Source: Tubulanus polymorphus (taxonomy: Eukaryota > Animalia > Nemertea). Taken from it: a stretch of DNA of 64,000 nucleotides. Shown piece after piece: positions 4,366 to 64,000 of the stretch; the first letter of the stretch is position 1, and each line of letters starts with the position of its first letter. The notes beneath the pieces were generated by a model that was given only the letters and a program-made list of their open reading frames with translations, was not told the origin of the DNA and searched no databases. Where the stretch lies: positions 2,584,778 to 2,648,777 of the forward strand of contig NC_134030.1 of the NCBI RefSeq assembly GCF_964204645.1. The letters run 5' to 3'. Both the position numbers and the translations under genes were made by a program.

Positions 4366-4607
4366 GTCCAAGCACCTTGGCATTAAATACTAAGTATTCT
4401 GATGTTTTTTTCTGGCAGCTTTGAAAACATCAACATAATCATACAATCGGTAACTAATCAATAACATCAGTAACTTAAGTTTATAGCTGTTTTACATTCT
4501 TTCTAAAAAGTAAAATGTATGTACATGATTTTAGATAGTAAGTCTACCCCAGTATAACAATAAACAGTCGCAGCAGTGATTGAGCGCGGCTAGTTCATAG
4601 GACGGTC

Positions 4608-4754
4608 GATCTTTCATCACAGTTATTCAAAGCATTCTATCATATCAGTTATTTTTTTAAGTGTGTTCGCTTTAGTTAAGGTTTATGGTTATTTGTTTTG
4701 TTCATTACAATAACTGAGTCCGATATAATGCTTTGAATAACAACAGAAAAGATC
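4608..4754. mobile_element. Imperfect fold-back/MITE remnant
   Basis: GATCTTT...GTTATTCAAAGCATT.TATC...TCAGTTATTT pairs with AAATAACTGA...GATATAATGCTTTGAATAAC...AAAGATC. Confidence 0.55.
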
Positions 4755-5892
4755 TCGGGTTTTCGCTATACCTAGGGAAGGTTGTTCGATAAATGAATAA
4801 CCTTGTTGATCAATATTTGAAAAAATGCCTTTTCATGTAAATAGAATATTAATTTTTTGTTTGTTTCTAATGTTGTTTATTATTTTTATCTATTTTTTGA
4901 TATTATATATTTATGTATGTACTTGTATTTTGTATTATTTACTACTTATTATTTATTGGTTTTTTTTTAAATTTATTCTTATATTAATTTATGTACTTGT
5001 AGTTTGTATTATGTATTATATATACTCCTCTATTTACAACTGCAGGCATTTTTTCACTGTAAAGTTTCTGGGCCCATTTTAGAAAAGCACTACCGATTCA
5101 CTGCCACTCCTTAATAATCATTATACACCCAATTTGAAGCTAAGTGATTATTCACGAGAGCCATCTCGTGATATGGATTTACCCATTACAATAAAAGAGG
5201 TTCAAACAGCTATAAACGATGTTAAAACGTTCAAAATTAGTCCTAGAAATAACTTTATGCCTTGTTATTCCTAGCTTTACCTCTCAAATGTAAATAATGG
5301 TCTCCTCTCAAATAAAGCTTTTGATTTCAAATACGTAGCTATGATCATCAAACAGATTGATGGAGGCTCAAAGTTAAAACTCGATGTTAAAATCGACATA
5401 CACGATTCAATTGTGAAATCAGTTACATGGGCCTTCGAAAATATAAATCCATCAAATAAATACATCTACAATTCAGCAAATACTTAATATTTGTACATCA
5501 ACACTGGCCTAACGTTATGTTCTGTTTCCTAACTATGTGATATCTACACGGACAAATAGCCATAGTTGACTATGTTTAACTATGGTAAAGTTTAAAGATT
5601 AAACTCACCATATCATGTTGAAACTATATCTCAGTTTAGGAGTTAACTCAACAGACCTGCAGCCCAAACAAGGCGATCGACGCGACCATTTACCCCTAGC
5701 GACTAACCTAACTTGACTTCTCTATCAACCAAGGATCGAATACCAATATCGTGAATTAATGGAGCTTAGCTTTTATTAGACTCTCACATTGCATTAAACA
5801 TTATAAAATAATTTCCTTTAAAACACTATATCAGACTGGTTTGAAAAAGGGTGATAAGTAAAACAATCAATACTTTACAACAGAAGTCCGTC

Positions 5893-6092
5893 CGCTATTG
5901 TTTTTGCCGCTCCTGGATCTCAGTGTTTATAAGATGCACTATTGTTTTTACTGCTCCTAATAAGATACACTATTGTCTTTGCTGCTTTTAAAACAGTGCT
6001 TATCCTGAATCAGTGTTTATGAGATAATCCATTAGCTTTGTCGCTCGAATCAGTGTTTATAAGATTCACTATAGTCTCTGCTGCGCCTGATA
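5893..6092. repeat. Degenerate ~43-bp tandem repeat (~5 units)
   Basis: Repeated CTATTGTTTTTGC(C/T)GCTCCT...TCAGTGTTTATAAGAT(G/A/T)CA. Confidence 0.75.
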
Positions 6093-6227
6093 AAATATTT
6101 TATAGAAATCAACCACCGTTTGTAGAAGAATCCATCGTTGAGTGAGTAATCCGTTGCTGGTTCCTCAACTTCTCATCTGGGCTTCTGCAGTTTTCATCAG
6201 CAAATGGGTCAATCAGTATTCATCTAC

Positions 6228-9200
6228 TTGTAGATTTTCTGATGAGTAGTTGATCTCAAGCTGAGTTTTTTCTCATAGTTGATATTTAGCTGCAATGATT
6301 AAAAGAAGATATTCTGTAATGACAAAATAGTTCAATAAGAATTAATCGTAACAATTTCATGTATATCAAGTTACCTTTTATGATTGCCTGGTCGTTATCG
6401 GCGTGGATCATCTAAAGTTTGTACGTTAATGAGTTCGATTCTGTTGGCCCCATCTGTGCGCTGTTTAAGTTGGTCGATTTTGGACGAGTAGTTGTTCTCA
6501 AGCTGGGTTTTTTCTCATAGTTGAAATTTGGCTGCAATGATTAAAAGAAGATATCCTTTAATAACAAAATATTTCAATAAGAATTAATTGAAATAATTCC
6601 ATGTACATCAAGTTACCTTTTATGATGGATGGTTTCATAATCGGCGATTATCTTATTAGTTGACTGGTTAATGAGTTCGATCCTAGTTGGCTGTGCACCG
6701 TTCAAGTTGGTTGATTTTAGATGAGTAGTTGTTCTCAAACTGGGTTTTTTCGCATAGTTGAAATTTAGCTGCAATGATCAAAAGAAGATATCCCGTTATG
6801 ACAAAATATTTCAATAAGAATTAATCGAAATAATTCCATGTATATCAAGTTACCTTTTATGATGGCTGGTTTCATTATCGGCGATTATCTTATTTGTTGA
6901 TTGGTTCATGAGTTCGATCCTAGTTGGCTGTGCACCGTTCAAGTTGGTTGATTTTAGATGAGTAGTTGTTCTCAAACTGGGTTTTTTTCGCATAGTTGAA
7001 ATTTAGCTGCAATGATCAAAAGAAGATATCCTTTAATGACAAAATATTTCAATAAGAATTAATCGTAATAATTTCATGTATATCAAGTTACCTTTTATGA
7101 TTGCTGGGTTCGTTATCGGCAATTATCTTATTAGTTGGTTGGTAAATGAGTTCGATTCTGTTGGCCTCATCTGTTTGCTGTACCAGTTTGTAGATCTTGG
7201 ACTAGTAGTTGTTCTCAAGCTGGGTTTCTTCTTAGAGTTGAAACTAAGCTGCAATGATTAAAAGAAGATATTCTGTAATGACCAAATATTTCAATAAGAA
7301 TTAATCGTAATAATTTCATGTAAGTCAAGTTACCTTTTATGATTGCTTGGTTCGTTATTGGTGCGGATCATCTAAAGTCGGTGGGTAAATGAGTTCGATT
7401 CTGTTGGCCTCATCTGTGCGCTGTTCAAGTTGGTCAATTTTTGACTAGTAGTTGATCTCAAGCTGGGTTTTTTCTTATTGTTGAAATTTAGCTGCAATGA
7501 TTAAAAGAAGATATCCTGTAATGACAAAATATTTCAAAAAGAATTAATCATAATACTTTCATGTATATCAAGTTACCTTTTATGATGGCTGGTTTCATTA
7601 TCGGCGATAATCTTATTAGTTGATTGGGCGATCTTGGGCGAGTAGTTGTTCTCAAGCTGGGTTTTTTCTCATAGGTGAAATTTAGCTGCAATGATTAAAA
7701 GAAGATATCCTTTAATAACAAAATATTTCAATAAGAATTAATCGTAATAATTTCATGTAAGTCAAGTTACCTTTTATGATTGCTGGGTTCGTTATTGGTG
7801 CGGATCATCTAAAGTCGGTGGGTAAATGAGTTCGATTCTGTTGGCCTCATCTGTGCTCTGTTCAAGTTGGTCGATTTTGGACTAGTAGTTGATCTCAAGC
7901 TGGGTTTTTTCTTATAGTTGAAATTTAGCTGCAATGATCAAAAGAAGATATCCCGTTATGACAAAATATTTCAATAAGAATTAATCGAAATAATTCCATG
8001 TATATCAAGTTACCTTTTATGATGGCTGGTTTCATTATTGGCGATTATCTTATTAGTTGATTGGGCGATTTTGGGCGAGTAGTTGATCTCAAGCTGGGTT
8101 TTTTCGCATAGTTGAAATTTAGCTGCAATGATCAAAAGAAGATATCCTTTAATAACAAAATATTTCAATAAGAATTAATCGAAATAATTCCATGTATATC
8201 AAGTTACCTTTTATGATGGCTGGTTTCATTATTGGCGATTATCTTATTAGTTGATTGGGCGATTTTGGGCGAGTAGTTGATCTCAAGCTGGGTTTTTTCT
8301 CATAGTTGAAATTTAGCTGCAATGATCAAAAGAAGATATCCTTTAATAACAAAATATTTCAATAAGAATTAATCGTAATAATTTCATGTATATCAAGTTA
8401 CCTTTTATGATTGCTGGGTTCGTTATCGGCAATTATCTTATTAGTTGGTTGGTAAATGAGTTCGATTCTGTTGGCCTCATCTGTTTGCTGTACCAGTTTG
8501 TAGATTTTGGACTAGTAGTTGATCTCAAGCTGGGTTTTTTCTTATAGTTGAAATTTAGCTGCAATGATCAAAAGAAGATATCCTGTAATGACAAAATATT
8601 TCAATAAGAATTAATCGTAATACTTTCATGTATATCAAGTTACCTTTTATGATGGCTGGTTTCATTATTGGCGATTATCTTATTAGTTGATTGGGCGATT
8701 TTGGGCAAGTAGTTGATCTCAAGCTGGGTTTTTTCTCATAGTTGAAATTTAGCTGCAATGATCAAAAGAAGATATCCTTTAATGACAAAATATTTCAATA
8801 AGAATTAATCGAAATAATTCCATGTACATCAAGTTACCTTTTATGATGGATGGTTTCATAATCGGCGATTATCTTATTAGTTGGTTGGTTAATGAGTTCG
8901 ATTCTGTTGGCCTCATCTGTTTGCTGTACCAGTTTGTAGATTTTGGACTAGTAGTTGATCTCAAGCTGGGTTTTTTCTTATAGTTGAAATTTAGCTGCAA
9001 TGATCAAAAGAAGATATCCTGTAATGACAAAATATTTCAATAAGAATTAATCGTAATACTTTCATGTATATCAAGTTACCTTTTATGATGGCTGGTTTCA
9101 TTATTGGCGATTATCTTATTAGTTGATTGGGCGATTTTGGGCAAGTAGTTGTTCTCAAGCTGGGTTTTTTCTCATAGTTGAAATTTAGCTGCAATGATCA

Positions 9201-12200
9201 AAAGAAGATATCCTTTAATAACAAAATATTTCAATAAGAATTAATCGTAATAATTTCATGTAAGTCAAGTTACCTTTTATGATTGCTGGGTTCGTTATTG
9301 GTGCGGATCATCTAAAGTCGGTGGGTAAATGAGTTCGATTCTGTTGGCCTCATCTGTGCTCTGTTCAAGTTGGTCGATTTTGGACGAGTAGTTGATCTCA
9401 AGCTGGGTTTTTTCTTATAGTTGAAATTTAGCTGCAATGATCAAAAGAAGATATCCCGTTATGACAAAATATTTCAATAAGAATTAATCGAAATAATTCC
9501 ATGTATCAAGTTACCTTTTATGATGGCTGGTTTCATTATTGGCGATTATCTTATTAGTTGATTGGGCGATTTTGGGCGAGTAGTTGATCTCAAGCTGGGT
9601 TTTTTCTCATAGTTGAAATTTAGCTGCAATGATCAAAAGAAGATATCCTTTAATAACAAAATATTTCAATAAGAATTAATCGTAATAATTTCATGTATAT
9701 CAAGTTACCTTTTATGATTGCTGGGTTCGTTATCGGCAATTATCTTATTAGTTGGTTGGTAAATGAGTTCGATTCTGTTGGCCTCATCTGTTTGCTGTAC
9801 CAGTTTGTAGATTTTGGACTAGTAGTTGATCTCAAGCTGGGTTTTTTCTTATAGTTGAAATTTAGCTGCAATGATCAAAAGAACATATCCTGTAATGACA
9901 AAATATTTCAATAAGAATTAATCGTAATACTTTCATGTATATCAAGTTACCTTTTATGATGGCTGGTTTCATTATTGGCGATTATCTTATTAGTTGATTG
10001 GGCGATTTTGGGCAAGTAGTTGTTCTCAAGCTGGGTTTTTTCTCATAGTTGAAATTTAGCTGCAATGATCAAAAGAAGATATCCTTTAATAACAAAATAT
10101 TTCAATAAGAATTAATCGTAATAATTTCATGTAAGTCAAGTTACCTTTTATGATTGCTGGGTTCGTTATTGGTGCGGATCATCTAAAGTCGGTGGGTAAA
10201 TGAGTTCGATTCTGTTGGCCTCATCTGTGCTCTGTTCAAGTTGGTCGATTTTGGACGAGTAGTTAATCTCAAGCTGGGTTTTTTCTTATAGTTGAAATTT
10301 AGCTGCAATGATCAAAAGAAGATATCCCGTTATGACAAAATATTTCAATAAGAATTAATCGAAATAATTCCATGTATATCAAGTTACCTTTTATGATGGC
10401 TGGTTTCATTATCGGCGATTATCTTATTTGTTGATTGGTTCATGAGTTCGATCCTAGTTGGCTGCGCACCGTTCAAGTTGGTTGATTTTAGATGAGTAGT
10501 TGTTCTCAAACTGGGTTTTTTTCGCATAGTTGAAATTTAGCTGCAATGATCAAAAGAAGATATCCTTTAATGACAAAATATTTCAATAAGAATTAATCGT
10601 AATAATTTCATGTATATCAAGTTACCTTTTATGATTGCTGGGTTCGTTATTGGTGCGTCTCATCTAAAGTCGGTGGGTAAATGAGTTCGATTCTGTTGGC
10701 CTCATCTGTTTGCTGTACCAGTTTGTAGATTTTGGACTAGTAGTTGATCTCAAGCTGGGTTTCTTCTTATAGTTGAAATTTAGCTGCAATGATTAAAAGA
10801 AGATATCCTGTAATGACAAAATATTTCAATAAGAATTAATCGTAATAATTTCATGTATATCAAGTTACCTTTTATGATTGCTGGGTTCGTTATCGGCAAT
10901 TATCTTATTAGTTGGTTGGTAAATGAGTTCGATTCTGTTGGCCTCATCTGTTTGCTGTACCAGTTTGTAGATTTTGGACTAGTAGTTGATCTCAAGCTGG
11001 GTTTTTTCTTATAGTTGAAATTTAGCTGCAATGATCAAAAGAAGATATCCTGTAATGACAAAATATTTCAATAAGAATTAATCGTAATACTTTCATGTAT
11101 ATCAAGTTACCTTTTATGATGGCTGGTTTCATTATTGGCGATTATCTTATTAGTTGATTGGGCGATTTTGGGCAAGTAGTTGTTCTCAAGCTGGGTTTTT
11201 TCTCATAGTTAAAATTTAGCTGCAATGATCAAAAGAAGATATCCTTTAATGACAAAATATTTCAATAAGAATTAATCGAAATAATTCCATGTACATCAAG
11301 TTACCTTTTATGATGGATGGTCTCATAATCGGCGATTATCTTATTAGTTGGTTGGTTAATGAGTTCGATTCTGTTGGCCTCATCTGTTTGCTGTACCAGT
11401 TTGTAGATTTTGGACGAGTAGTTGATCTCAAACTGGGTTTCTTCTTAGAGTTGAAATTAAGCTGCAATGATTAAAAGAAGATATTCTGTAATGACCAAAT
11501 ATTTCAATAAGAATTAATCGTAATAATTTCATGTAAGTCAAGTTACCTTTTATGATTGCTGGGTTCGTTATTGGTGCGTCTCATCTAAAGTCGGTGGGTA
11601 AATGAGTTCGATTCTGTTGGCCTCATCTGTGCTCTGTTCAAGTTGGTCGATTTTGGACGAGTAGTTGATCTCAAGCTGGGTTTTTTCTTATAGTTGAAAT
11701 TTAGCTGCAATGATCAAAAGAACATATCCCGTTATGACAAAATATTTCAATAAGAATTAATCGAAATAATTCCATGTATATCAAGTTACCTTTTATGATG
11801 GCTGGTTTCATTATTGGCGATTATCTTATTAGTTGATAGGGCGATTTTGGGCGAGTAGTTGATCTCAAGCTGGGTTTTTTCTCATAGTTGAAATTTAGCT
11901 GCAATGATCAAAAGAAGATATCCTTTAATAACAAAATATTTCAATAAGAATTAATCGTAATAATTTCATGTATATCAAGTTACCTTTTATGACTGCTGGG
12001 TTCGTTATCGGCAATTATCTTATTAGTTGGTTGGTAAATGAGTTCGATTCTGTTGGCCTCATCTGTTTGCTGTACCAGTTTGTAGATTTTGGACTAGTAG
12101 TTGATCTCAAGCTGGGTTTTTTCTTATAGTTGAAATTTAGCTGCAATGATCAAAAGAAGATATCCTGTAATGACAAAATATTTCAATAAGAATTAATCGT

Positions 12201-15200
12201 AATACTTTCATGTATATCAAGTTACCTTTTATGATGGCTGGTTTCATTATTGGCGATTATCTTATTAGTTGATTGGGCGATTTTGGGCAAGTAGTTGTTC
12301 TCAAGCTGGGTTTTTTCTCATAGTTGAAATTTAGCTGCAATGATCAAAAGAAGATATCCTTTAATGACAAAATATTTCAATAAGAATTAATCGAAATAAT
12401 TCCATGTACATCAAGTTACCTTTTATGATGGATGGTTTCATAATCGGCGATTATCTTATTAGTTGGTTGGTTAATGAGTTCGATTCTGTTGGCCTCATCT
12501 GTTTGCTGTACCAGTTTGTAGATTTTGGACTAGTAGTTGATCTCAAGCTGGGTTTCTTCTTAGAGTTGAAATTAAGCTGCAATGATTAAAAGAAGATATT
12601 CTGTAATGACCAAATATTTCAATAAGAATTAATCGTAATAATTTCATGTAAGTCAAGTTACCTTTTATGATTGCTGGGTTCGTTATTGGTGCGGATCATC
12701 TAAAGTCGGTGGGTAAATGAGTTCGATTCTGTTGGCCTCATCTGTGCTCTGTTCAAGTTGGTCGATTTTGGACGAGTAGTTGATCTCAAGCTGGGTTTTT
12801 TCTTATAGTTGAAATTTAGCTGCAATGATCAAAAGAAGATATCCCGTTATGACAAAATATTTCAATAAGAATTAATCGAAATAATTCCATGTATATCAAG
12901 TTACCTTTTATGATGGCTGGTTTCATTATTGGCGATTATCTTATTAGTTGATTGGGCGATTTTGGGCGAGTAGTTGATCTCAAGCTGGGTTTTTTCTCAT
13001 AGTTGAAATTTAGCTGCAATGATCAAAAGAAGATATTCTTTAATAACAAAATATTTCAATAAGAATTAATCGTAATAATTTCATGTATATCAAGTTACCT
13101 TTTATGATTGCTGGGTTCGTTATCGGCAATTATCTTATTAGTTGGTTGGTAAATGAGTTCGATTCTGTTGGCCTCATCTGTTTGCTGTACCAGTTTGTAG
13201 ATTTTGGACTAGTAGTTGATCTCAAGCTGGGTTTTTTCTTATAGTTGAAATTTAGCTGCAATGATCAAAAGAAGATATCCTGTAATGACAAAATATTTCA
13301 ATAAGAATTAATCGTAATACTTTCATGTATATCAAGTTACCTTTTATGATGGCTGGTTTCATTATTGGCGATTATCTTATTAGTTGATTGGGCGATTTTG
13401 GGCAAGTAGTTGTTCTCAAGCTGGGTTTTTTCTCATAGTTGAAATTTAGCTGCAATGATCAAAAGAAGATATCCTTTAATGACAAAATATTTCAATAAGA
13501 ATTAATCGAAATAATTCCATGTACATCAAGTTACCTTTTATGATGGATGGTTTCATAATCGGCGATTATCTTATTAGTTGGTTGGTTAATGAGTTCGATT
13601 CTGTTGGCCTCATCTGTTTGCTGTACCAGTTTGTAGATTTTGGACTAGTAGTTGATCTCAAGCTGGGTTTCTTCTTAGAGTTGAAATTAAGCTGCAATGA
13701 TTAAAAGAAGATATTCTGTAATGACCAAATATTTCAATAAGAATTAATCGTAATAATTTCATGTAAGTCAAGTTACCTTTTATGATTGCTGGGTTCGTTA
13801 TTGGTGCGTCTCATCTAAAGTCGGTGGGTAAATGAGTTCGATTCTGTTGGCCTCATCTGTGCTCTGTTCAAGTTGGTCGATTTTGGACGAGTAGTTGATC
13901 TCAAGCTGGGTTTTTTCTTATAGTTGAAATTTAGCTGCAATGATCAAAAGAAGATATCCCGTTATGACAAAATATTTCAATAAGAATTAATCGAAATAAT
14001 TCCATGTATATCAAGTTACCTTTTATGATGGCTGGTTTCATTATTGGCGATTATCTTATTAGTTGATTGGGCGATTTTGGGCGAGTAGTTGATCTCAAGC
14101 TGGGTTTTTTCTCATAGTTGAAATTTAGCTGCAATGATCAAAAGAAGATATCCTTTAATAACAAAATATTTCAATAAGAATTAATCGTAATAATTTCATG
14201 TATATCAAGTTACCTTTTATGATTGCTGGGTTCGTTATCGGCAATTATCTTATTAGTTGGTTGGTAAATGAGTTCGATTCTGTTGGCCTCATCTGTTTGC
14301 TGTACCAGTTTGTAGATTTTGGACTAGTAGTTGATCTCAAGCTGGGTTTTTTCTTATAGTTGAAATTTAGCTGCAATGATCAAAAGAACATATCCTGTAA
14401 TGACAAAATATTTCAATAAGAATTAATCGTAATACTTTCATGTATATCAAGTTACCTTTTATGATGGCTGGTTTCATTATTGGCGATTATCTTATTAGTT
14501 GATTGGGCGATTTTGGGCAAGTAGTTGTTCTCAAGCTGGGTTTTTTCTCATAGTTGAAATTTAGCTGCAATGATCAAAAGAAGATATCCTTTAATAACAA
14601 AATATTTCAATAAGAATTAATCGTAATAATTTCATGTAAGTCAAGTTACCTTTTATGATTGCTGGGTTCGTTATTGGTGCGGATCATCTAAAGTCGGTGG
14701 GTAAATGAGTTCGATTCTGTTGGCCTCATCTGTGCTCTGTTCAAGTTGGTCAATTTTGGACGAGTAGTTGATCTCAAGCTGGGTTTTTTCTTATAGTTGA
14801 AATTTAGCTGCAATGATCAAAAGAAGATATCCCGTTATGACAAAATATTTCAATAAGAATTAATCGAAATAATTCCATGTATATCAAGTTACCTTTTATG
14901 ATGGCTGGTTTCATTATTGGCGATTATCTTATTAGTTGATTGGGCGATTTTGGGCGAGTAGTTGATCTCAAGCTGGGTTTTTTCTCATAGTTGAAATTTA
15001 GCTGCAATGATCAAAAGAAGATATCCTTTAATAACAAAATATTTCAATAAGAATTAATCGTAATAATTTCATGTAAGTCAAGTTACCTTTTATGATTGCT
15101 GGGTTCGTTATTGGTGCGGATCATCTAAAGTCGGTGGGTAAATGAGTTCGATTCTGTTGGCCTCATCTGTGCTCTGTTCAAGTTGGTCGATTTTGGACGA

Positions 15201-18200
15201 GTAGTTGATCTCAAGCTGGGTTTTTTCTTATAGTTGAAATTTAGCTGCAATGATCAAAAGAAGATATCCCGTTATGACAAAATATTTCAATAACAATTAA
15301 TCGAAATAATTCCATGTATATCAAGTTACCTTTTATGATGGCTGGTTTCATTATTGGCGATTATCTTATTAGTTGATTGGGCGATTTTGGGCGAGTAGTT
15401 GATCTCAAGCTGGGTTTTTTCTCATAGTTGAAATTTAGCTGCACTGATCAAAAGAAGATATCCTTTAATAACAAAATATTTCAATAAGAATTAATCGTAA
15501 TAATTTCATGTATATCAAGTTACCTTTTATGATTGCTGGGTTCGTTATCGGCAATTATCTTATTAGTTGGTTGGTAAATGAGTTCGATTCTGTTGGCCTC
15601 ATCTGTTTGCTGTACCAGTTTGTAGATTTTGGACTAGTAGTTGATCTCAAGCTGGGTTTTTTCTTATAGTTGAAATTTAGCTGCAATGATCAAAAGAAGA
15701 TATCCTGTAATGACAAAATATTTCAATAAGAATTAATCGTAATACTTTCATGTATATCAAGTTACCTTTTATGATGGCTGGTTTCATTATTGGCGATTAT
15801 CTTATTAGTTGATTGGGCGATTTTGGGCAAGTAGTTGTTCTCAAGCTGGGTTTTTTCTCATAGTTGAAATTTAGCTGCAATGATCAAAAGAAGATATCCT
15901 TTAATAACAAAATATTTCAATAAGAATTAATCGTAATAATTTCATGTAAGTCAAGTTACCTTTTATGATTGCTGGGTTCGTTATTGGTGCGGATCATCTA
16001 AAGTCGGTGGGTAAATGAGTTCGATTCTGTTGGCCTCATCTGTGCTCTGTTCAAGTTGGTCAATTTTGGACGAGTAGTTGATCTCAAGCTGGGTTTTTTC
16101 TTATAGTTGAAATTTAGCTGCAATGATCAAAAGAAGATATCCCGTTATGACAAAATATTTCAATAAGAATTAATCGAAATAATTCCATGTATATCAAGTT
16201 ACCTTTTATGATGGCTGGTTTCATTATTGGCGATTATCTTATTAGTTGATTGGGCGATTTTGGGCGAGTAGTTGATCTCAAGCTGGGTTTTTTCTCATAG
16301 TTGAAATTTAGCTGCAATGATCAAAAGAAGATATCCTTTAATAACAAAATATTTCAATAAGAATTAATCGTAATAATTTCATGTATATCAAGTTACCTTT
16401 TATGATTGCTGGGTTCGTTATCGGCAATTATCTTATTAGTTGGTTGGTAAATGAGTTCGATTCTGTTGGCCTCATCTGTTTGCTGTACCAGTTTGTAGAT
16501 TTTGGACTAGTAGTTGATCTCAAGCTGGGTTTTTTCTTATAGTTGAAATTTAGCTGCAATGATCAAAAGAAGATATCCTGTAATGACAAAATATTTCAAT
16601 AAGAATTAATCGTAATACTTTCATGTATATCAAGTTACCTTTTATGATGGCTGGTTTCATTATTGGCGATTATCTTATTAGTTGATTGGGCGATTTTGGG
16701 CAAGTAGTTGTTCTCAAGCTGGGTTTTTTCTCATAGTTGAAATTTAGCTGCAATGATCAAAAGAAGATATCCTTTAATAACAAAATATTTCAATAAGAAT
16801 TAATCGTAATAATTTCATGTAAGTCAAGTTACCTTTTATGATTGCTGGGTTCGTTATTGGTGCGGATCATCTAAAGTCGGTGGGTAAATGAGTTCGATTC
16901 TGTTGGCCTCATCTGTGCTCTGTTCAAGTTGGTCGACTTTGGACTAGTAGTTGATCTCAAGCTGGGTTTTTTCTTATAGTTGAAATTTAGCTGCAATGAT
17001 CAAAAGAACATATCCCGTTATGACAAAATATTTCAATAAGAATTAATCGAAATAATTCCATGTATATCAAGTTACCTTTTATGATGGCTGGTTTCATTAT
17101 TGGCGATTATCTTATTAGTTGATTGGGCGATTTTGGGCGAGTAGTTGATCTCAAGCTGGGTTTTTTCTCATAGTTGAAATTTAGCTGCAATGATCAAAAG
17201 AAAATCCTTTAATAACAAAATATTTCAATAAGAATTAATCGTAATAATTTCATGTATATCAAGTTACCTTTTATGATTGCTGGGTTCGTTATCGGCAATT
17301 ATCTTATTAGTTGGTTGGTAAATGAGTTCGATTCTGTTGGCCTCATCTGTTTGCTGTACCAGTTTGTAGATTTTGGACTAGTAGTTGATCTCAAGCTGGG
17401 TTTTTTCTTATAGTTGAAATTTAGCTGCAATGATCAAAAGAAGATATCCTGTAATGACAAAATATTTCAATAAGAATTAATCGTAATACTTTCATGTATA
17501 TCAAGTTACCTTTTATGATGGCTGGTTTCATTATTGGCGATTATCTTATTAGTTGATTGGGCGATTTTGGGCAAGTAGTTGTTCTCAAGCTGGGTTTTTT
17601 CTCATAGTTGAAATTTAGCTGCAATGATCAAAAGAAGATATCCTTTAATGACAAAATATTTCAATAAGAATTAATCGAAATAATTCCATGTACATCAAGT
17701 TACCTTTTATGATGGATGGTTTCATAATCGGCGATTATCTTATTTGTTGGTTGGTTAATGAGTTCGATTCTGTTGGCCTCATCTGTTTGCTGTACCAGTT
17801 TGTAGATTTTGGACTAGTAGTTGATCTCAAGCTGGGTTTCTTCTTAGAGTTGAAATTAAGCTGCAATGATTAAAAGAAGATATTCTGTAATGACCAAATA
17901 TTTCAATAAGAATTAATCGTAATAATTTCATGTAAGTCAAGTTACCTTTTATGATTGCTGGGTTCGTTATTGGTGCGGATCATCTAAAGTCGGTGGGTAA
18001 ATGAGTTCGATTCTGTTGGCCTCATCTGTGCTCTGTTCAAGTTGGTCGATTTTGGACGAGTAGTTGATCTCAAGCTGGGTTTTTTCTTATAGTTGAAATT
18101 TAGCTGCAATGATCAAAAGAAGATATCCCGTTATGACAAAATATTTCAATAAGAATTAATCGAAATAATTCCATGTATATCAAGTTACCTTTTATGATGG

Positions 18201-21200
18201 CTGGTTTCATTATTGGCGATTATCTTATTAGTTGATTGGGCGATTTTGGGCGAGTAGTTGATCTCAAGCTGGGTTTTTTCTCATAGTTGAAATTTAGCTG
18301 CAATGATCAAAAGAAGATATCCTTTAATAACAAAATATTTCAATAAGAATTAATCGTAATAATTTCATGTATATCAAGTTACCTTTTATGATTGCTGGGT
18401 TCGTTATCGGCAATTATCTTATTAGTTGGTTGGTAAATGAGTTCGATTCTGTTGGCCTCATCTGTTTGCTGTACCAGTTTGTAGATTTTGGACTAGTAGT
18501 TGATCTCAAGCTGGGTTTTTTCTTATAGTTGAAATTTAGCTGCAATGATCAAAAGAAGATATCCTGTAATGACAAAATATTTCAATAAGAATTAATCGTA
18601 ATACTTTCATGTATATCAAGTTACCTTTTATGATGGCTGGTTTCATTATTGGCGATTATCTTATTAGTTGATTGGGCGATTTTGGGCAAGTAGTTGTTCT
18701 CAAGCTGGGTTTTTTCTCATAGTTGAAATTTAGCTGCAATGATCAAAAGAAGATATCCTTTAATGACAAAATATTTCAATAAGAATTAATCGAAATAATT
18801 CCATGTACATCAAGTTACCTTTTATGATGGATGGTTTCATAATCGGCGATTATCTTATTAGTTGGTTGGTTAATGAGTTCGATTCTGTTGGCCTCATCTG
18901 TTTGCTGTACCAGTTTGTAGATTTTGGACTAGTAGTTGATCTCAAGCTGGGTTTTTTCTTATAGTTGAAATTTAGCTGCAATGATCAAAAGAAGATATCC
19001 TGTAATGACAAAATATTTCAATAAGAATTAATCGTAATACTTTCATGTATATCAAGTTACCTTTTATGATGGCTGGTTTCATTATTGGCGATTATCTTAT
19101 TAGTTGATTGGGCGATTTTGGGCAAGTAGTTGTTCTCAAGCTTGGTTTTTTCTCATAGTTGAAATTTAGCTGCAATGATCAAAAGAAGATATCCTTTAAT
19201 AACAAAATATTTCAATAAGAATTAATCGTAATAATTTCATGTAAGTCAAGTTACCTTTTATGATTGCTGGGTTCGTTATTGGTGCGGATCATCTAAAGTC
19301 GGTGGGTAAATGAGTTCGATTCTGTTGGCCTCATCTGTGCTCTGTTCAAGTTGGTCGATTTTGGACGAGTAGTTGATCTCAAGCTGGGTTTTTTCTTATA
19401 GTTGAAATTAAGCTGCAATGATCAAAAGAAGATATCCCGTTATGACAAAATATTTCAATAAGAATTAATCGAAATAATTCCATGTATCAAGTTACCTTTT
19501 ATGATGGCTGGTTTCATTATTGGCGATTATCTTATTAGTTGATTGGGCGATTTTGGGCGAGTAGTTGATCTCAAGCTGGGTTTTTTCTCATAGTTGAAAT
19601 TTAGCTGCAATGATCAAAAGAAGATATCCTTTAATAACAAAATATTTCAATAAGAATTAATCGTAATAATTTCATGTATATCAAGTTACCTTTTATGATT
19701 GCTGGGTTCGTTATCGGCAATTATCTTATTAGTTGGTTGGTAAATGAGTTCGATTCTGTTGGCCTCATCTGTTTGCTGTACCAGTTTGTAGATTTTGGAC
19801 TAGTAGTTGATCTCAAGCTGGGTTTTTTCTTATAGTTGAAATTTAGCTGCAATGATCAAAAGAACATATCCTGTAATGACAAAATATTTCAATAAGAATT
19901 AATCGTAATACTTTCATGTATATCAAGTTACCTTTTATGATGGCTGGTTTCATTATTGGCGATTATCTTATTAGTTGATTGGGCGATTTTGGGCAAGTAG
20001 TTGTTCTCAAGCTGGGTTTTTTCTCATAGTTGAAATTTAGCTGCAATGATCAAAAGAAGATATCCTTTAATAACAAAATATTTCAATAAGAATTAATCGT
20101 AATAATTTCATGTAAGTCAAGTTACCTTTTATGATTGCTGGGTTCGTTATTGGTGCGGATCATCTAAAGTCGGTGGGTAAATGAGTTCGATTCTGTTGGC
20201 CTCATCTGTGCTCTGTTCAAGTTGGTCGATTTTGGACGAGTAGTTGATCTCAAGCTGGGTTTTTTCTTATAGTTGAAATTTAGCTGCAATGATCAAAAGA
20301 AGATATCCCGTTATGACAAAATATTTCAATAAGAATTAATCGAAATTATTCCATGTATATCAAGTTACCTTTTATGATGGCTGGTTTCATTATTGGCGAT
20401 TATCTTATTAGTTGATTGGGCGATTTTGGGCGAGTAGTTGATCTCAAGCTGGGTTTTTTCTCATAGTTGAAATTTAGCTGCAATGATCAAAAGAACATAT
20501 CCCGTTATGACAAAATATTTCAATAAGAATTAATCGAAATAATTCCATGTATATCAAGTTACCCTGATGGCTGGTTTCATTATTGGCGATTATCTTATTA
20601 GTTGATTGGGCGATTTTGGGCGAGTAGTTGTTCTCAAGCTGGGTTTTTTCTCATAGTTAAAATTTAGCTGCAATTATCAAAAGAAGATATCCTTTAATGA
20701 CAAAATATTTCAATAAGAATTAATCGAAATAATTCCATGTACATCAAGTTACCTTTTATGATGGATGGTTTCATAATCGGCGATTATCTTATTAGTTGGT
20801 TGGTTAATGAGTTCGATTCTGTTGGCCTCATCTGTTTGCTGTACCAGTTTGTAGATTTTGGACGAGTAGTTGATCTCAAACTGGGTTTCTTCTTAGAGTT
20901 GAAATTAAGCTGCAATGATTAAAAGAAGATATTCTGTAATGACCAAATATTTCAATAAGAATTAATCGTAATAATTTCATGTAAGTCAAGTTACCTTTTA
21001 TGATTGCTGGGTTCGTTATTGGTGCGTCTCATCTAAAGTCGGTGGGTAAATGAGTTCGATTCTGTTGGCCTCATCTGTGCTCTGTTCAAGTTGGTCGATT
21101 TTGGACGAGTAGTTGATCTCAAGCTGGGTTTTTTCTTATAGTTGAAATTTAGCTGCAATGATCAAAAGAAGATATCCCGTTATGACAAAATATTTCAATA

Positions 21201-24200
21201 ACAATTAATCGAAATAATTCCATGTATATCAAGTTACCTTTTATGATGGCTGGTTTCATTATTGGCGATTATCTTATTAGTTGATTGGGCGATTTTGGGC
21301 GAGTAGTTGATCTCAAGCTGGGTTTTTTCTCATAGTTGAAATTTAGCTGCAATGATCAAAAGAAGATATCCTTTAATAACAAAATATTTCAATAAGAATT
21401 AATCGTAATAATTTCATGTATACCAAGTTACCTTTTATGATTGCTGGGTTCGTTATCGGCAATTATCTTATTAGTTGGTTGGTAAATGAGTTCGATTCTG
21501 TTGGCCTCATCTGTTTGCTGTACCAGTTTGTAGATTTTGGACTAGTAGTTGATCTCAAGCTGGGTTTTTTCTTATAGTTGAAATTTAGCTGCAATGATCA
21601 AAAGAAGATATCCTGTAATGACAAAATATTTCAATAAGAATTAATCGTAATACTTTCATGTATATCAAGTTACCTTTTATGATGGCTGGTTTCATTATTG
21701 GCGATTATCTTATTAGTTGATTGGGCGATTTTGGGCAAGTAGTTGTTCTCAAGCTGGGTTTTTTCTCATAGTTGAAATTTAGCTGCAATGATCAAAAGAA
21801 GATATCCTTTAATGACAAAATATTTCAATAAGAATTAATCGAAATAATTCCATGTACATCAAGTTACCTTTTATGATGGATGGTTTCATAATCGGCGATT
21901 ATCTTATTAGTTGGTTGGTTAATGAGTTCGATTCTGTTGGCCTCATCTGTTTGCTGTACCAGTTTGTAGATTTTGGACGAGTAGTTGATCTCAAACTGGG
22001 TTTTTTCTCACAATTGAAATTTAGCTGCAATGATTAAAAGAAGATATTCTGTAATGACAAAATATTTCAATAAGAATTAATCGTAATAATTTCATGTATA
22101 TCAAGTTACCTTTTATGATTGCTGGTTTCATTATCGGTGATTATCTTATTAGTTGATTGGTAAATGAGTTCGATCCTAGTTGGCTGTGCACCGTTCAAGT
22201 TGGTTGATTTTTGACGAGTAGTTGTTCTCAAACTGGGTTTTTTTTCGCATAGTTGAAATTTAGCTGCAATGATCAAAAGAAGATATCCTTTAATGACAAA
22301 ATATTTCAATAAGAATTGATCGTAATAATTTCATGTATATCAAGTTACCTTTTATGATTGCTGGTTTCATAATCGGCGATTATCTTATCAATTGGTTGGT
22401 AAATGAGTTCGATTCTGTTGGCCTCATCTGTTTGCTGTACCAGTTTGTAGATTTTGGACTAGTAGTTGATCTCAAGCTGGGTTTCTTCTTATAGTTGAAA
22501 TTTAGCTGCAATGATTAAAAGAAGATATCCTGTAATGACAAAATATTTCAATAAGAATTAATCGTAATAATTTCATGTATATCAAGTTACCTTTTATGAT
22601 TGCTGGGTTCGTTATCGGCAATTATCTTATTAGTTGGTTGGTAAATGAGTTCGATTCTGTTGGCCTCATCTGTTTGCTGTACCAGTTTGTAGATTTTGGA
22701 CTAGTAGTTGATCTCAAGCTGGGTTTTTTCTTATAGTTGAAATTTAGCTGCAATGATCAAAAGAAGATATCCTGTAATGACAAAATATTTCAATAAGAAT
22801 TAATCGTAATACTTTCATGTATATCAAGTTACCTTTTATGATGGCTGGTTTCATTATTGGCGATTATCTTATTAGTTGATTGGGCGATTTTGGGCAAGTA
22901 GTTGTTCTCAAGCTGGGTTTTTTCTCATAGTTAAAATTTAGCTGCAATTATCAAAAGAAGATATCCTTTAATGACAAAATATTTCAATAAGAATTAATCG
23001 AAATAATTCCATGTACATCAAGTTACCTTTTATGATGGATGGTTTCATAATCGGCGATTATCTTATTAGTTGGTTGGTTAATGAGTTCGATTCTGTTGGC
23101 CTCATCTGTTTGCTGTACCAGTTTGTAGATTTTGGACGAGTAGTTGATCTCAAACTGGGTTTCTTCTTAGAGTTGAAATTAAGCTGCAATGATTAAAAGA
23201 AGATATTCTGTAATGACCAAATATTTCAATAAGAATTAATCGTAATAATTTCATGTAAGTCAAGTTACCTTTTATGATTGCTGGGTTCGTTATTGGTGCG
23301 TCTCATCTAAAGTCGGTGGGTAAATGAGTTCGATTCTGTTGGCCTCATCTGTGCTCTGTTCAAGTTGGTCGATTTTGGACGAGTAGTTGATCTCAAGCTG
23401 GGTTTTTTCTTATAGTTGAAATTTAGCTGCAACGATCAAAAGAAGATATCCCGTTATGACAAAATATTTCAATAAGAATTAATCGAAATAATTCCATGTA
23501 TATCAAGTTACCTTTTATGATGGCTGGTTTCATTATTGGCGATTATCTTATTAGTTGATTGGGCGATTTTGGGCGAGTAGTTGATCTCAAGCTGGGTTTT
23601 TTCTCATAGTTGAAATTTAGCTGCAATGATCAAAAGAAGATATCCTTTAATAACAAAATATTTCAATAAGAATTAATCGTAATAATTTCATGTATATCAA
23701 GTTACCTTTTATGATTGCTGGGTTCGTTATCGGCAATTATCTTATTAGTTGGTTGGTAAATGAGTTCGATTCTGTTGGCCTCATCTGTTTGCTGTACCAG
23801 TTTGTAGATTTTGGACTAGTAGTTGATCTCAAGCTGGGTTTTTTCTTATAGTTGAAATTTAGCTGCAATGATCAAAAGAAGATATCCTGTAATGACAAAA
23901 TATTTCAATAAGAATTAATCGTAATACTTTCATGTATATCAAGTTACCTTTTATGATGGCTGGTTTCATTATTGGCGATTATCTTATTAGTTGATTGGGC
24001 GATTTTGGGCAAGTAGTTGTTCTCAAGCTGGGTTTTTTCTCATAGTTGAAATTTAGCTGCAATGATCAAAAGAAGATATCCTTTAATGACAAAATATTTC
24101 AATAAGAATTAATCGTTATAATTTCATGTATATCAAGTTACCTTTTATGATTGCTTGGTTCGTTATCGGTGTGGATCATCTAAAGTTTGTGGGTTAATAA

Positions 24201-25253
24201 GTTCGATTCTGTTGGCCTCATCTGTGCGCTGTGCAAGTTGGTCGATTTTTGACGAGTAGTAGTTCTCAAACTGGGTTTTTCTCGAAGTTGAAATTTTGCT
24301 GCAATGATTAAAAGAAGATATCCTGTAATGACCAAATATTTCAATAAGAATTAATCGTAATAATTTCATGTATATCAAGTTACCTTTTATGATGGCTGGT
24401 TTCATTATTGGCGCGATTATCTTATTAGTTGACTGTTTAATGAGTTCGATCCTAGTTGGCTGTGCACCGTTCAAGTTGGTTGATTTTTGAGTGGTAGTTG
24501 TTCTCAAACTGGGTTTTTTCGCATAATTGAAATTTAGCTGCAATGATCAAAAGAAGATATCCTTTAATGACAAAATATTTCAATAAGAATTAATCGTAAT
24601 AATTTCATGTATATCAAGTTACCTTTTATGATTGCTTGGTTCGTTATCGGCAATTATCTTATTAATTGGTTGGTAAATGAGTTCGATTCTGTTGGCCTCA
24701 TCTGTGCGCTGTGCAAGTTGGTCGATTTTTGACGAGTAGTAGTTCTCAAACTGGGTTTTTCTCAAAGTTGAAATTTTGCTGCTATGATTAAAAGAAGATA
24801 TCCTGTAATGGAAAAATATTTCAATAAGAATTAATCGTAATAATTTCATGTATATCAAGTTACCTTTTATGATTGCTTGGTTCGTTATCGGCGTGGATCA
24901 TCTAAAGTTTGTGTGTTAATGAGTTTGATCCTGTTGGCCCCATCTGTGCGCTGTTCAAGTTGGTCGATTATAGGCGAGTAGTTGTTCTCAAGCTGGGTTT
25001 TTTCTCATAGTTGAAATTTAGCTGCAATGATCAAAAGACGATATCCTTTAATAACAAAATATTTCAATAAGAATTAATCGTAATAATTCTATGTATATCA
25101 AGTTACCTTTTATGATTGCTGGTTTCATTATCGGCGATTATCTTATTAGTTGATTGGTAAATGAGTTCGATCCTAGTTGGCTGTGCGCCATTTAAGTTGG
25201 TCGATTTTTGACGAGTAGTTGTTCTCAAACTGGGTTTTTTTTCGCATAGTTGA
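6228..25253. repeat. ~19-kb tandem satellite array, ~85 monomers of 194/237/242/243 bp with higher-order structure
   Basis: Near-invariant core CTGCAATGAT(C/T)AAAAGAAGATAT...AAATATTTCAATAAGAATTAATCG...CATGTA...CAAGTTACCTTTTATGAT; successive monomer anchors 11289, 11531, 11774, 11968, 12210, 12404 (242+243+194+242+194=1115). Confidence 0.99.
24623..24778 (-). pseudogene. Intact-looking symmetric phase-2 coding exon (156 nt) in an edge monomer of the array
   Basis: TAGCAG|CAAAATTTC...CATAAAAG|GTAACT; reads SKISTLRKTQFENYYSSKIDQLAQRTDEANRIELIYQPINKIIADNEPSNHK with no stop; the interior copies translated are frameshifted or stopped. Confidence 0.55.
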
Positions 25254-25280
25254 TTATCGGTAAGGTCTCCTAAGTTGGTT

Positions 25281-25433
25281 GTCTAATTTTACATTTCTTT
25301 GCTCTTTTTTTCGTGTAAATAGTCCGAAAGTTTACAAGGTTTAAGATAATTTCGTCTAATTTTTACATTTCTTTGGTTTTTTTTTTCATGTAAATAGTCC
25401 GAAAGCTTACAAGGTCGTAATTTTGTCTAATTT
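25281..25433. repeat. Short ~73-bp tandem duplication at the array boundary
   Basis: GTCTAATTTT(T)ACATTTCTTTG...TGTAAATAGTCCGAAAG(T/C)TTACAAGGT twice plus a partial third. Confidence 0.85.
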
Positions 25434-25879
25434 TTTTTGGTTTAGGTTTTTTCAAAATCGGAAATCGAAGTACAGATATAGTTGTGTGATCGGCGGTCGA
25501 TTTCACATAAATTTCTTTTTCTTTAAATCCGAGCACATAATTGTGAAATTTGGTTCCGGTTCATTCAATTAATCTCGCAACCAGTCTGAACCGGCAAGCG
25601 ACTGATTGGGGTCAATTAAGTTGACTGCCTATTTTAATACATCGAGATTTGGAATATCTATATTACAAGGTTGAAGATCATTTTTATACGTTTTATGTTT
25701 AGTTGATTAGTAGTATAGCTGAAAAAAGAGCAGAATCTGGTGAGCAGAAAATCCTTTCGAATATCACTGATCATGATTAACGTGTCAATTCATATATATA
25801 TATATATAAGATCAGCAATGTGGACCGGTAAGTAGATTTTGATAATAGTCGATTATCAAAAATAACTATATGAAATTCA

Positions 25880-28515: not shown

Positions 28516-28623
28516 CCGGCCATAGAGCTTCAATAAAGTAGTGTGAGAATGGTGAGCTTGACCAGCATCTGTATCCTCACTAGTGCCTATGCATTCTACC
28601 CCAGATATGAAAAATCAACTTAG

Positions 28624-28939
28624 CTTTATGTATGTATGCATTCCTGTTGCCATGCAGGATGAGACTGCCAGGTTTGGTTGCGGCAGGTCTTTCGGTGTTT
28701 GGTTCATTCAACATGGAGTCTTTTGTGGGCACTTCTAGTGGGTAGATTTTAGATGGGCCTTTCCGGATTAACCTGAAATGAGTAGAAGAACGATATTCTG
28801 TAGTTACACAATCCTTTCTGTATCATACATTGTAATTTACACATGTATCAACTTAACTTTCAATATTACTGAGTTCAGTGTTCTTTTTTCGCCATCTTCT
28901 GTAGTCGCCTTCAGCATCTTCTTCTTCATCTTGGGAGTC
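28624..28939 (-). pseudogene. Two putative exons separated by an 84-85-nt intron homologous to the satellite intron
   Basis: Strong acceptors at 28940 (CTCTTTTTTTTCAG) and 28773 (CTTCTACTCATTTCAG); exons read DSQDEEEDAEGDYRRWRKKNTELSNIER and LIRKGPSKIYPLEVPTKDSMLNEPNTERPAATKPG...; donors degenerate (AAAG TTAAGTTGAT, AAAG CTAAGTTGAT vs satellite AAAG GTAACTTGAT). Confidence 0.5.
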
Positions 28940-28975
28940 CTGAAAAAAAAGAGAAGAGCGATGAAAACCTGGTAC

Positions 28976-29924: not shown

Positions 29925-29949
29925 GTCTGCACAGTGTGAGAGAGCGGAG

Positions 29950-49331: not shown

Positions 49332-64000
<14,669 letters not shown>

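What the first reader, a model, noticed from the sequence alone, without database searches (positions are those of the whole stretch)
6228..25253. The 19-kb satellite is a tandemly amplified exon + 85-nt intron module (minus strand): candidate ~85-exon spliced transcript
Seen: on the minus strand essentially every monomer contains AAAAG|GTAACTTGAT...TCTTCTTTT(A/G)ATCATTGCAG|CT. This is a canonical donor and a pyrimidine-rich acceptor exactly 85 nt apart (e.g. plus 11220-11304), the same size as the short genuine POLE introns here (77-88 nt). The intervening 'exons' are 157/158/152/109 nt. The splice sites and intron are the most invariant part of the monomer, while exon middles differ between monomer types. 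The interior exon types I translated (157, 158 and 109 nt) are stopped in all three frames. Inference: either a satellite born from a gene's exon-intron unit, or a functional multi-exon repeat lncRNA able to splice combinatorially (skipping, back-splicing to circular RNA).
Basis: partly seen in the sequence, partly recalled or inferred. Interest (0 to 1): 0.9.

Follow-up and report, generated by a model that had tools for sequence, protein, structure and literature searches.

The report
Mobile-element satellite with intron-like monomers
The 19-kb repeat block is a recently expanded copy of the internal tandem repeat of a large repeat unit scattered over all chromosomes; each monomer does carry an intron-looking GT...AG segment of 85 bases, but nothing available shows that it is ever spliced.

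Summary
Window 6228-25253 has 86 head-to-tail monomers of 194, 242 or 243 bp. On the minus strand, 84 donors (AAAAG|GTAACTTGA) and 85 acceptors (TTGCAG|CT) alternate, 85 nt apart in 81 of 84 cases.

The array sits inside a dispersed unit, window ~1903-30316, whose flanks recur at 84-94% identity at 25-40 or more places on chromosomes C1-C12. Arrays in other copies run from ~0.4 kb to ~21 kb. The window array is a local, very recent expansion: its 1115-bp higher-order units are 99.1-99.8% identical. Invariance across its 84 sites is therefore not independent evidence.

Against splicing:
- On a matrix trained on 17 POLE introns, the donor is average and lacks the +5 G; the acceptor is weak.
- 11-40% of shuffled monomers carry an equally good pair.
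- The "intron" interior is more conserved than the "exons".
- No intron-less copies exist in the genome.
- No RNA run holds the sequence.

For an intron-like origin or constraint:
- GT and AG are among the better-kept dinucleotides genome-wide.
- The 85-nt size and the GC contrast match real introns.

Splicing is untested, and I put it at about 15-20%. The scan noted what look like sister arrays before (s1-508809, s1-509269, s1-493058).

The parts
6228..25253 (-). Satellite array: 86 monomers (194/242/243 bp) in higher-order units of 436, about 873 and 1115 bp. Every monomer carries GT...AG 85 nt apart on the minus strand.
11220..11304 (-). One example of the 85-nt intron-like segment (GTAACTTGAT...CATTGCAG). 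No Rfam family and no significant fold.
25254..30316 (-). 5' flank (in the GT-AG sense) of the dispersed unit. It is 78-92% identical to the sequence upstream of the arrays at L033, L035, L036, L038, L041, L042 and L043. Homology with the window ends sharply at 30316, while several other copies run on further.
1903..6227 (-). 3' flank of the dispersed unit, 85-94% identical to the sequence downstream of the arrays at L031, L032, L034, L037, L039 and L040. AATAAA lies about 35-40 nt before the end of homology.
28773..28857 (-). Solo diverged homologue of the intron-like segment, 3.4 kb upstream of the array and also 85 nt GT..AG. The GT is shifted by 1 nt (AAA|GTTAAGT; the homologous position reads TT). 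It is present in the same place in other copies of the unit.
   Evidence: nhmmer E 2e-6 over window 28766-28879
28858..28939 (-). 'Exon A'-like piece before the solo segment (82 nt, open frame in this copy).
28624..28772 (-). 'Exon B'-like piece after the solo segment (149 nt, open in this copy; its frame is broken by indels in L038, L042 and L043). The next donor position reads CT, not GT, in all copies.
25281..25435 (.). 75-bp tandem repeat (2.2 copies) next to the array. The same piece is amplified to long arrays of about 69-bp period in other copies of the unit (for example C10:1.978 Mb).
29004..29681 (.). Inverted repeat inside the 5' flank (arms 29004-29194 and 29491-29681, 191 nt, 77% complementary). 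The 147-aa ORF at 29481-29924 (-) runs through one arm, has no Pfam match, and its frame is not kept between copies.
47918..48890 (-). Separate fragment of the unit's 3' flank (86% identical to window 1921-2884), upstream of POLE.
   Evidence: G000:C6:2632695-2633667

Best explanation
The 19-kb block is the internal tandem repeat of a large dispersed, mobile-element-like repeat unit. The unit has about 5.1 kb of 5' flank, then the array, then about 4.3 kb of 3' flank, and it occupies window ~1903-30316 on the minus strand. Shown: the same flanks, in the same order and orientation around the same satellite, recur at 25-40 or more places on C1-C12 at 84-94% identity. Array length differs from copy to copy, from about 0.4 kb to about 21 kb, and most arrays that could be sized are 1-7 kb. 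Shown: in this copy the array grew by repeated duplication of blocks of 2-5 monomers (436-1115 bp), which are still 99.1-99.8% identical. Inferred: the growth happened by unequal crossing-over or replication slippage. Inferred: every monomer inherited its GT...AG from a founder monomer, so uniformity inside the window reflects recent copying, not 84 independently maintained sites. Inferred, moderately likely: the founder may itself descend from an exon-intron piece of a gene. The 85-nt size, the GC contrast, the good conservation of GT and AG, and a diverged solo copy with the same 85-nt spacing all point that way. Present-day splicing or function of the RNA is not shown by any data available here, and I consider it unlikely.
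For: Dispersed unit:
- blastn of the window's flanks against 13 other loci gives 2-4.4 kb alignments at 84-94% on both sides of the array.
- Whole-genome searches with 2 kb of each flank give 251 and 84 matches on C1-C12, with paired 5' and 3' hits 3-25 kb apart.
- Complete arrays in fetched loci are 1.3-1.9 kb: L032 has 6 monomers and L033-L035 have 8-9.
- The monomer words occur about 600-700 times genome-wide, at many places with only a few monomers.

Recent local expansion:
- 1115-bp units are 99.1-99.8% identical.
- There are only 14, 16 and 11 distinct sequences among the 30, 26 and 18 monomers of each type.

Splice-likeness is not above chance:
- The matrix comes from 17 POLE introns solved against Hydra POLE.
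- The donor AAG|GTAACT scores 5.3 bits (real donors 2.3-11.6) and has C at +5, where 15 of 17 real donors have G.
- The acceptor scores 1.2 bits in the TTTTGATC form (the commonest 194- and 242-bp monomers) and 5.6 bits in the TTTTAATC form (the commonest 243-bp monomer); real acceptors score -0.8 to 14.5.
- 11-40% of dinucleotide-shuffled monomers have an equally good pair 60-150 nt apart.

Conservation is not shaped like a splicing constraint. Per-base non-consensus is 2.2% at the donor, 4.6% in the intron interior, 3.9% at the acceptor and 9.8% in the exons.

Other negatives:
- No intron-less monomers: the junction word is absent, and the near matches that lie inside arrays are acceptor variants.
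- No coding signal.
- No Rfam family and no stable hairpin in the 85-nt segment.
Against: - GT is invariant in 137 monomers from other arrays (top 10 of 241 dinucleotide windows), and AG varies in only 3 of 138 (top 33 of 241). The joint chance is roughly 0.006 before allowing for post-hoc choice.
- Genome-wide, GT and AG vary 3-7 times less than three neighbouring dinucleotides. Those neighbours are dominated by a few inherited variants, so this counts copies, not events.
- The putative donor and acceptor are the best-scoring ones on their strand.
- The 85-nt length falls in the genome's short-intron class.
- The GC contrast between intron and exon parts (25% against 38%) resembles the real one (35% against 43%).
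- The diverged solo copy kept an 85-nt GT..AG through a 1-nt donor shift.
'Mobile element' therefore rests on copy number and dispersal alone.
- The splice matrix rests on only 17 introns.
Confidence: 0.65

Rival explanations
1. The arrays are transcribed on the GT-AG strand, and the 85-nt segment of every monomer is removed by the spliceosome. This would give multi-exon repeat RNAs of up to about 85 exons here and more elsewhere. Selection would keep the splice signals: a functional repeat lncRNA family, possibly with exon skipping or back-splicing.
For: - GT and AG are among the best-kept dinucleotides.
- The pair is the best donor and best acceptor on its strand.
- The length equals the short-intron class, 77-86 nt.
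- The segment is AT-rich between GC-richer 'exons'.
- The solo relic kept an 85-nt GT..AG.
- An AATAAA lies on the same strand near the 3' end of the unit.
- An earlier follow-up on a probable sister array reached this reading (s1-509269). That is a lead, not evidence.
Against: - No RNA has been seen: X3 (guessed RNA) holds none of the words and nothing of it was laid. X1 and X2 behave like fragmented DNA assemblies and show no 85-nt joints among those listed.
- The donor lacks +5 G, the acceptor is weak in the commonest 194- and 242-bp monomers, and shuffles match the pair 11-40% of the time.
- The exons, which would make the mature RNA, are the least conserved part, and the intron interior is as conserved as the acceptor.
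- 3 of 138 monomers elsewhere have lost AG.
- The second donor of the solo relic is dead in all copies.
- The intron holds no small-RNA-like content.
Confidence: 0.15
2. The monomer is a fossil. An exon-intron piece of a once real gene was captured by, or lay within, the dispersed unit and was then tandemly duplicated. The splice signals are leftovers that decay slowly because the arrays keep being homogenised and re-amplified.
For: - 85-nt size, GC contrast and a good donor context AAG|GT.
- Frame 0 of most exons has a single stop.
- The solo relic 3.4 kb upstream looks like exon-intron-exon with both exon pieces open in this copy.
- The scan has followed up another tandem array of a dead gene in this genome (s1-487589; not checked by me).
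Against: - No parent gene was found.
- Open exon-frames are fewer than in shuffles: 6 against 17.5.
- The frames of the solo 'exons' are broken by indels in other copies.
- Exon lengths of 109, 157 and 158 nt do not keep a reading frame.
- The pair could arise by chance.
Confidence: 0.25

Closest known systems
Satellite-like central repeats carried by non-autonomous Helentron elements (Cg_HINE) in the Pacific oyster (PMC7492417); more generally, satellites that arise from transposon-internal tandem repeats (reviews PMC12628747, PMC9659126)
   Same: The same satellite family occurs as many arrays across all chromosomes. Each array is framed by the same two flanking sequences in fixed order and orientation. 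The repeat number differs from copy to copy. A few copies have grown into long, classical-looking satellite arrays.
   Different: The flanks here are 4-5 kb or more each, and mosaic, with variable outer limits; those elements have short flanks as I recall. No Helentron or Helitron terminal features, no transposase or Rep gene and no target-site evidence were found or could be tested. The monomer's intron-like design is not, to my knowledge, a feature of those elements.
Higher-order-repeat satellites (for example primate alpha satellite) - from general knowledge
   Same: Diverged monomer types (83-93% alike) are arranged in multi-monomer units that are themselves nearly identical (99%+). This is the signature of recent unequal exchange.
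   Different: The arrays are not tied to one chromosomal site such as a centromere. They lie in chromosome arms inside a dispersed unit. The unit structure is irregular, with periods of 436, about 873 and 1115 bp.
Tandem exon-intron units of non-coding host genes (SNORD116/115 cluster; C19MC) - review PMC5054931 and general knowledge
   Different: In those loci the intron carries a snoRNA or miRNA and the transcripts are documented. Here the 85-nt segment matches no Rfam family and has no significant fold, it is too short to house a snoRNA in the usual way, and no transcript is known.

Membership tests
Spliceosomal (U2-type GT-AG) intron | GT at the 5' end and AG at the 3' end | tested here: met
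   84 of 84 donors and 85 of 85 acceptors in the window. 137 of 137 GT and 135 of 138 AG in other arrays.
Spliceosomal (U2-type GT-AG) intron | Donor and acceptor context like that of the species' own introns, and better than chance | tested here: not met
   The donor scores 5.3 bits but has C at +5, where 15 of 17 real donors have G. The acceptor scores 1.2 bits in the commonest 194- and 242-bp monomers and 5.6 bits in the commonest 243-bp monomer. 11-40% of shuffled monomers do as well. The matrix rests on only 17 introns.
Spliceosomal (U2-type GT-AG) intron | Length within the species' intron size range | tested here: met
   85 nt; POLE introns of 77, 79, 85 and 86 nt exist.
Spliceosomal (U2-type GT-AG) intron | Removed from RNA (junction reads) | tested here: inconclusive
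   No RNA run holds the sequence. The runs that hold it look like DNA and list no 85-nt skip. The junction word is absent from genomic DNA.
Satellite DNA with higher-order repeats | Long head-to-tail array of 150-400-bp monomers, with multi-monomer units more alike than neighbouring monomers | tested here: met
   86 monomers over 19 kb. Monomer types are 83-93% alike, and the 1115-bp units are 99.1-99.8% alike.
Transposon-borne central tandem repeat (HINE-like or other) | The same array family framed by the same flanks at many dispersed sites, with variable repeat number | tested here: met
Transposon-borne central tandem repeat (HINE-like or other) | Defined termini, target-site duplication or empty sites, and superfamily hallmarks (for example a Helentron terminal structure or an autonomous partner) | tested here: inconclusive
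   The window copy ends sharply at 30316 and about 1903, with no obvious duplication or terminal inverted repeat. Other copies extend further and are mosaic. There are no ORFs of 180 aa or more inside the shared flanks. More loci could not be fetched.
Small-RNA host gene with tandem exon-intron units (SNORD116 / C19MC type) | The intron encodes a snoRNA or miRNA | tested here: not met
   No Rfam match better than E of about 0.7 to 10 on 1.2 kb of array. Fold z-scores are -1.3 to +1.6. No C/D box motifs were seen by eye.

The most novel reading that the evidence does not exclude
A mobile-element-borne satellite whose arrays are transcribed and spliced monomer by monomer. That would be a family of dispersed loci producing repeat RNAs with tens to hundreds of tiny exons, with the GT/AG signals held by selection while the exon sequence drifts. 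This is the reading an earlier follow-up gave for a probable sister array.
Probability: 0.15. Interest if true: 0.75.

Novelty: new member of a known kind. Interest (0 to 1): 0.33.

Why it matters
As it stands, this is one more example of a satellite that lives inside, and spreads with, a dispersed repeat unit and occasionally balloons into a long array. That is useful for annotating this genome: at least four first-stage notes probably describe the same family. It also shows satellite birth from interspersed repeats, but it is not surprising. It would matter much more if the arrays proved to be transcribed and spliced. That would be a repeat RNA made of up to hundreds of exons, carried around the genome by a mobile unit, and a natural system for studying intron definition on a perfectly periodic template. 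The modest excess conservation of GT and AG keeps that door open, and one RNA experiment would close or open it.

Tried and rejected
- Rfam at the gathering threshold on the whole window found only U4atac at 41700-41835. With permissive E-values on 1.2 kb of array it found only noise.
- Mirtron or hairpin idea: folds of the 85-nt segment are no better than shuffles.
- The 48-nt insert of the 242/243-bp monomers (CAGATGAGGCC...CGAAC) looks faintly like a hammerhead core or a tRNA B box by eye. No Rfam support, so I dropped it.
- Coding potential of the exons: fewer open frames than shuffles.
- The 147-aa ORF at 29481-29924 (-), which starts like a signal peptide, has no Pfam family. It lies across an inverted repeat and its frame is not kept between copies, so it is not a gene. 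It contains a motif that I recall from LINE reverse-transcriptase tails. That is memory only and was not tested.
- Positional orthology of monomers between short arrays was not seen; the arrays have turned over independently.
- My first monomer alignment began and ended at the acceptor, which made AG look invariant through end-trimming. I redid it with a rotated model.
- Organism identity: the ZNF protein look-up found nothing, and the POLE exon's best full-length relatives are Macrostomum and Hydra, which is not informative. Another agent's guess of 'ribbon worm' was not checked.
The exons were handled by reference, and the one exception was the 20-nt junction word, the junction quoted in the finding extended by 2 nt at its 5' end and trimmed by 2 nt at its 3' end, used as a genome pattern.
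Full report
**1. What is there**

Tandem Repeats Finder reports one continuous array at window 6244-25253, with periods of 194, 242/243 and 436. This gave 84 donors (AAAAG|GTAACTTGA) and 85 acceptors (ATCATTGCAG|CT) in strict alternation. The spacing is 85 nt in 81 cases and 83 nt in 3. The 'exons' are 109 nt (32), 157 (27), 158 (18) and 152-156 (6). The single apparent exception, at 20478-20667, has a 4-nt deletion that still leaves AGG|GTAACT.

The consensus exons are stopped in all frames. Only 6 of 249 exon-frames are open, against 17.5 +/- 3.8 in shuffles, so there is no coding signal.

**2. The array is young**

Monomer types differ by 7-17%. The multi-monomer units are almost identical: 1115-bp units at 10970, 12085, 13200, 17369 and 22692 are 99.1-99.8% alike. 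The 30, 26 and 18 monomers of the three types comprise only 14, 16 and 11 distinct sequences. The 84 'invariant' splice sites in the window are therefore copies made very recently, not 84 independent observations.

**3. The array is part of a dispersed unit**

A 436-bp dimer finds arrays on C1, C2, C4, C5, C6 (three further sites), C8, C9, C10 and C11. I fetched 13 of these sites.

- In each of the six '+'-oriented loci where the model gave such a hit, a lone partial monomer hit lies 2.9-3.6 kb upstream of the array. In four of them (L038, L041-L043) it is the counterpart of the window's diverged copy at 28.6-28.9 kb. In L033 and L035 the hit lies in a different repeat.
- blastn of the window's flanks against the others gives long alignments on both sides. 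The 5' side matches from window 25254 to 30316, and the 3' side from 6227 down to about 1903-1921. Identity is 84-94%.
- Whole-genome searches with 2 kb of each flank give 251 and 84 matches on C1-C12.
- Pairing 5' and 3' hits gives array sizes from about 0.4 kb (C6:0.79 Mb) through 1.7-6.6 kb (most of the copies that could be paired) to about 17-21 kb (C8:9.88 Mb, C8:10.61 Mb, C11:10.39 Mb and this window).
- Complete arrays in the fetched loci have 6-9 monomers.
- The donor and acceptor words occur about 600-700 times genome-wide, at many sites with only a few monomers.

The '19-kb satellite' is thus one expanded copy of the internal tandem repeat of a repeat family. This is the pattern described for oyster Cg_HINE elements (PMC7492417) and in reviews of transposon-derived satellites.

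I could not classify the unit.
- There is no ORF of 180 aa or more inside the shared flanks.
- The 147-aa ORF near the 5' end has no Pfam family, lies across a 191-nt inverted repeat, and is frame-shifted between copies.
- The window copy ends sharply with no evident target duplication or terminal inverted repeat. Other copies extend further and are mosaic.

'Mobile element' therefore rests on copy number, dispersal and constant architecture. Its mechanism of spread is unknown.

**4. Is the GT...AG more splice-like than chance?**

I solved 17 POLE introns by aligning Hydra POLE (P0036, found with a POLE exon of the window) to window 50-62 kb. They are 77-869 nt long, with a short class of 77, 79, 85 and 86 nt. 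15 of 17 have G at +5 and all have T at -5.

On matrices built from them:
- The satellite donor AAG|GTAACT scores 5.3 bits (leave-one-out real donors 2.3-11.6) and has C at +5.
- The acceptor scores 1.2 bits in the TTTTGATCATTGCAG form, the commonest 194- and 242-bp monomers.
- It scores 5.6 bits in the TTTTAATC form, the commonest 243-bp monomer. Real acceptors score -0.8 to 14.5.
- The pair is the best on its strand, but the other strand has donors and acceptors about as good.
- Among 1000 dinucleotide-preserving shuffles per monomer type, 27%, 40% and 11% carry a GT..AG pair 60-150 nt apart that is at least as good at both sites.

The caveat is that the matrix rests on 17 introns.

**5. Is there selection on the sites?**

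My first alignment started and ended at the acceptor, and local-alignment trimming made AG look invariant. I rebuilt the model rotated by 62 nt. Results for 138 monomers from about a dozen other arrays:

| Measure | Result |
|---|---|
| GT variants | 0 of 137 (among the 10 best of 241 dinucleotide windows) |
| AG variants | 3 of 138 (AC, TG, AT; among the 33 best) |
| Per-base non-consensus, donor +1..+6 | 2.2% |
| Per-base non-consensus, intron interior | 4.6% |
| Per-base non-consensus, last 20 nt of the intron | 3.9% |
| Per-base non-consensus, exons | 9.8% |

Genome-wide word counts with two free positions:

| Position | Non-consensus |
|---|---|
| Donor GT | 8 of 601 |
| Donor +3+4 | 25 of 618 |
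| Donor +5+6 | 39 of 632 |
| Acceptor AG | 8 of 662 |
| Exon +2+3 | 59 of 713 |

GT and AG are thus among the better-kept positions. The joint chance is roughly 0.006 before allowing for post-hoc choice. This agrees in direction with the earlier follow-up on a probable sister array (s1-509269).

It is weak evidence, for three reasons.
- The counts are copies, not events. The neighbours' variants are mostly one or two inherited forms such as GTAATT and CTGAAT.
- 38 of 242 columns are equally invariant.
- The whole ~165-nt core is conserved, not just the splice signals. An intron interior twice as conserved as the exons is the opposite of what a spliced RNA with a functional mature product predicts.

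**6. Features that do look intron-like**

- The 85-nt length.
- GC of 25% in the segment against 38% in the 'exons'; POLE introns have 35% and exons 43%.
- A diverged solo copy at window 28766-28879 (nhmmer E 2e-6). Its GT has moved by one base (AAA|GTTAAGT), yet it is again exactly 85 nt from a good acceptor. Both flanking pieces are open in this copy.

Against this:
- The solo donor scores only 2.1 bits.
- The next donor position is CT in all copies.
- The flanking frames are broken by indels in other copies.

A fossil exon-intron origin is plausible but unproven, and no parent gene was found.

**7. RNA**

X1 and X2 are of unknown kind and hold 23% of the words. X3 is guessed to be RNA and holds none.

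I laid them on window 24350-30330, which covers four edge monomers plus the whole 5' flank.
- X1 and X2 are very short contigs that cover every bin, including the non-repeat-array parts. X2's longest contig is 83 kb.
- The joints listed are copy-to-copy rearrangements. None is an 85-nt CT..AC skip. 43 further joints were not shown.
- Nothing from X3 was laid.

X1 and X2 look like DNA. The test says nothing firm about expression.

Near matches number 18 against 8 for the reversed control. The four that lie inside arrays are acceptor variants, and none reads as a clean exon-exon junction. So there are no processed, intron-less copies. Apart from that word, I built and searched no joined (spliced) model.

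**8. Small-RNA ideas**

There is no Rfam family for the monomer, and no fold better than shuffles.

**9. Verdict**

- The object is a member of a known kind: a satellite carried inside a dispersed, mobile-element-like unit, here expanded very recently into higher-order repeats.
- The exon-intron look is real at the sequence level and may be a fossil.
- Active splicing is untested. I give it about 15-20%, and a selected function less.

Noticed in passing
window 41700-41835 (-): A full-length U4atac minor-spliceosome snRNA gene (Rfam RF00618, 73 bits, gathering score 53). The organism therefore has the minor spliceosome.
   Followed up: no
window 50134-63998 (+): DNA polymerase epsilon catalytic subunit gene. 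About 28 exons match Hydra and Macrostomum POLE up to about residue 1400, and the gene runs off the window's end. 17 introns were solved (77-869 nt). Two introns hold tandem repeats: a 46-bp unit at 55482-56201 and a GT-rich minisatellite at 57191-57962.
   Followed up: partly
window 33709-36216 (+): A single 835-aa open frame with at least six C2H2 zinc fingers (Pfam PF00096, E 9.5e-35). It is probably an intronless zinc-finger gene. No exact product is on record.
   Followed up: partly
window 25281-25435, and G000:C10:1978046-1978850, C10:12449284-12449940, C10:1223112-1223559: The 75-bp repeat beside the array (2.2 copies here) is itself amplified into arrays of about 69-bp period in other copies of the unit. 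The unit thus carries at least two independent tandem-repeat seeds.
   Followed up: no
window 26470-28430 (-): The 3.4-kb spacer between the solo relic and the array holds four or five loosely similar modules (each with ...ttcag|G(C/T)C... followed by gtttaactgacaat... and ...cttagat...), every 350-650 bp. This may be an older, decayed tandem repeat. It was seen by eye only.
   Followed up: no
window 29481-29924 (-) and its inverted partner at 29004-29194: The ORF across the inverted repeat contains ...RKRQLSFAGHMSRM..., which I recall as resembling the C-terminal tail of LINE reverse transcriptases. If so, the 5' flank holds two inverted LINE 3' fragments. This is memory only, and there is no Pfam hit.
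   Followed up: no
window 47918-48890 (-): An isolated 1-kb fragment of the unit's 3' flank (86% identical) lies about 1.2 kb upstream of the first detected POLE exon.
   Followed up: no
window 38400-45900 (+): A run of open frames rich in charged and coiled-coil-like sequence (for example 39418-39705, 40283-40660, 42444-42809, 44831-45130, 45570-45854) suggests another multi-exon gene between the zinc-finger gene and POLE. The U4atac gene lies on the opposite strand within it.
   Followed up: no
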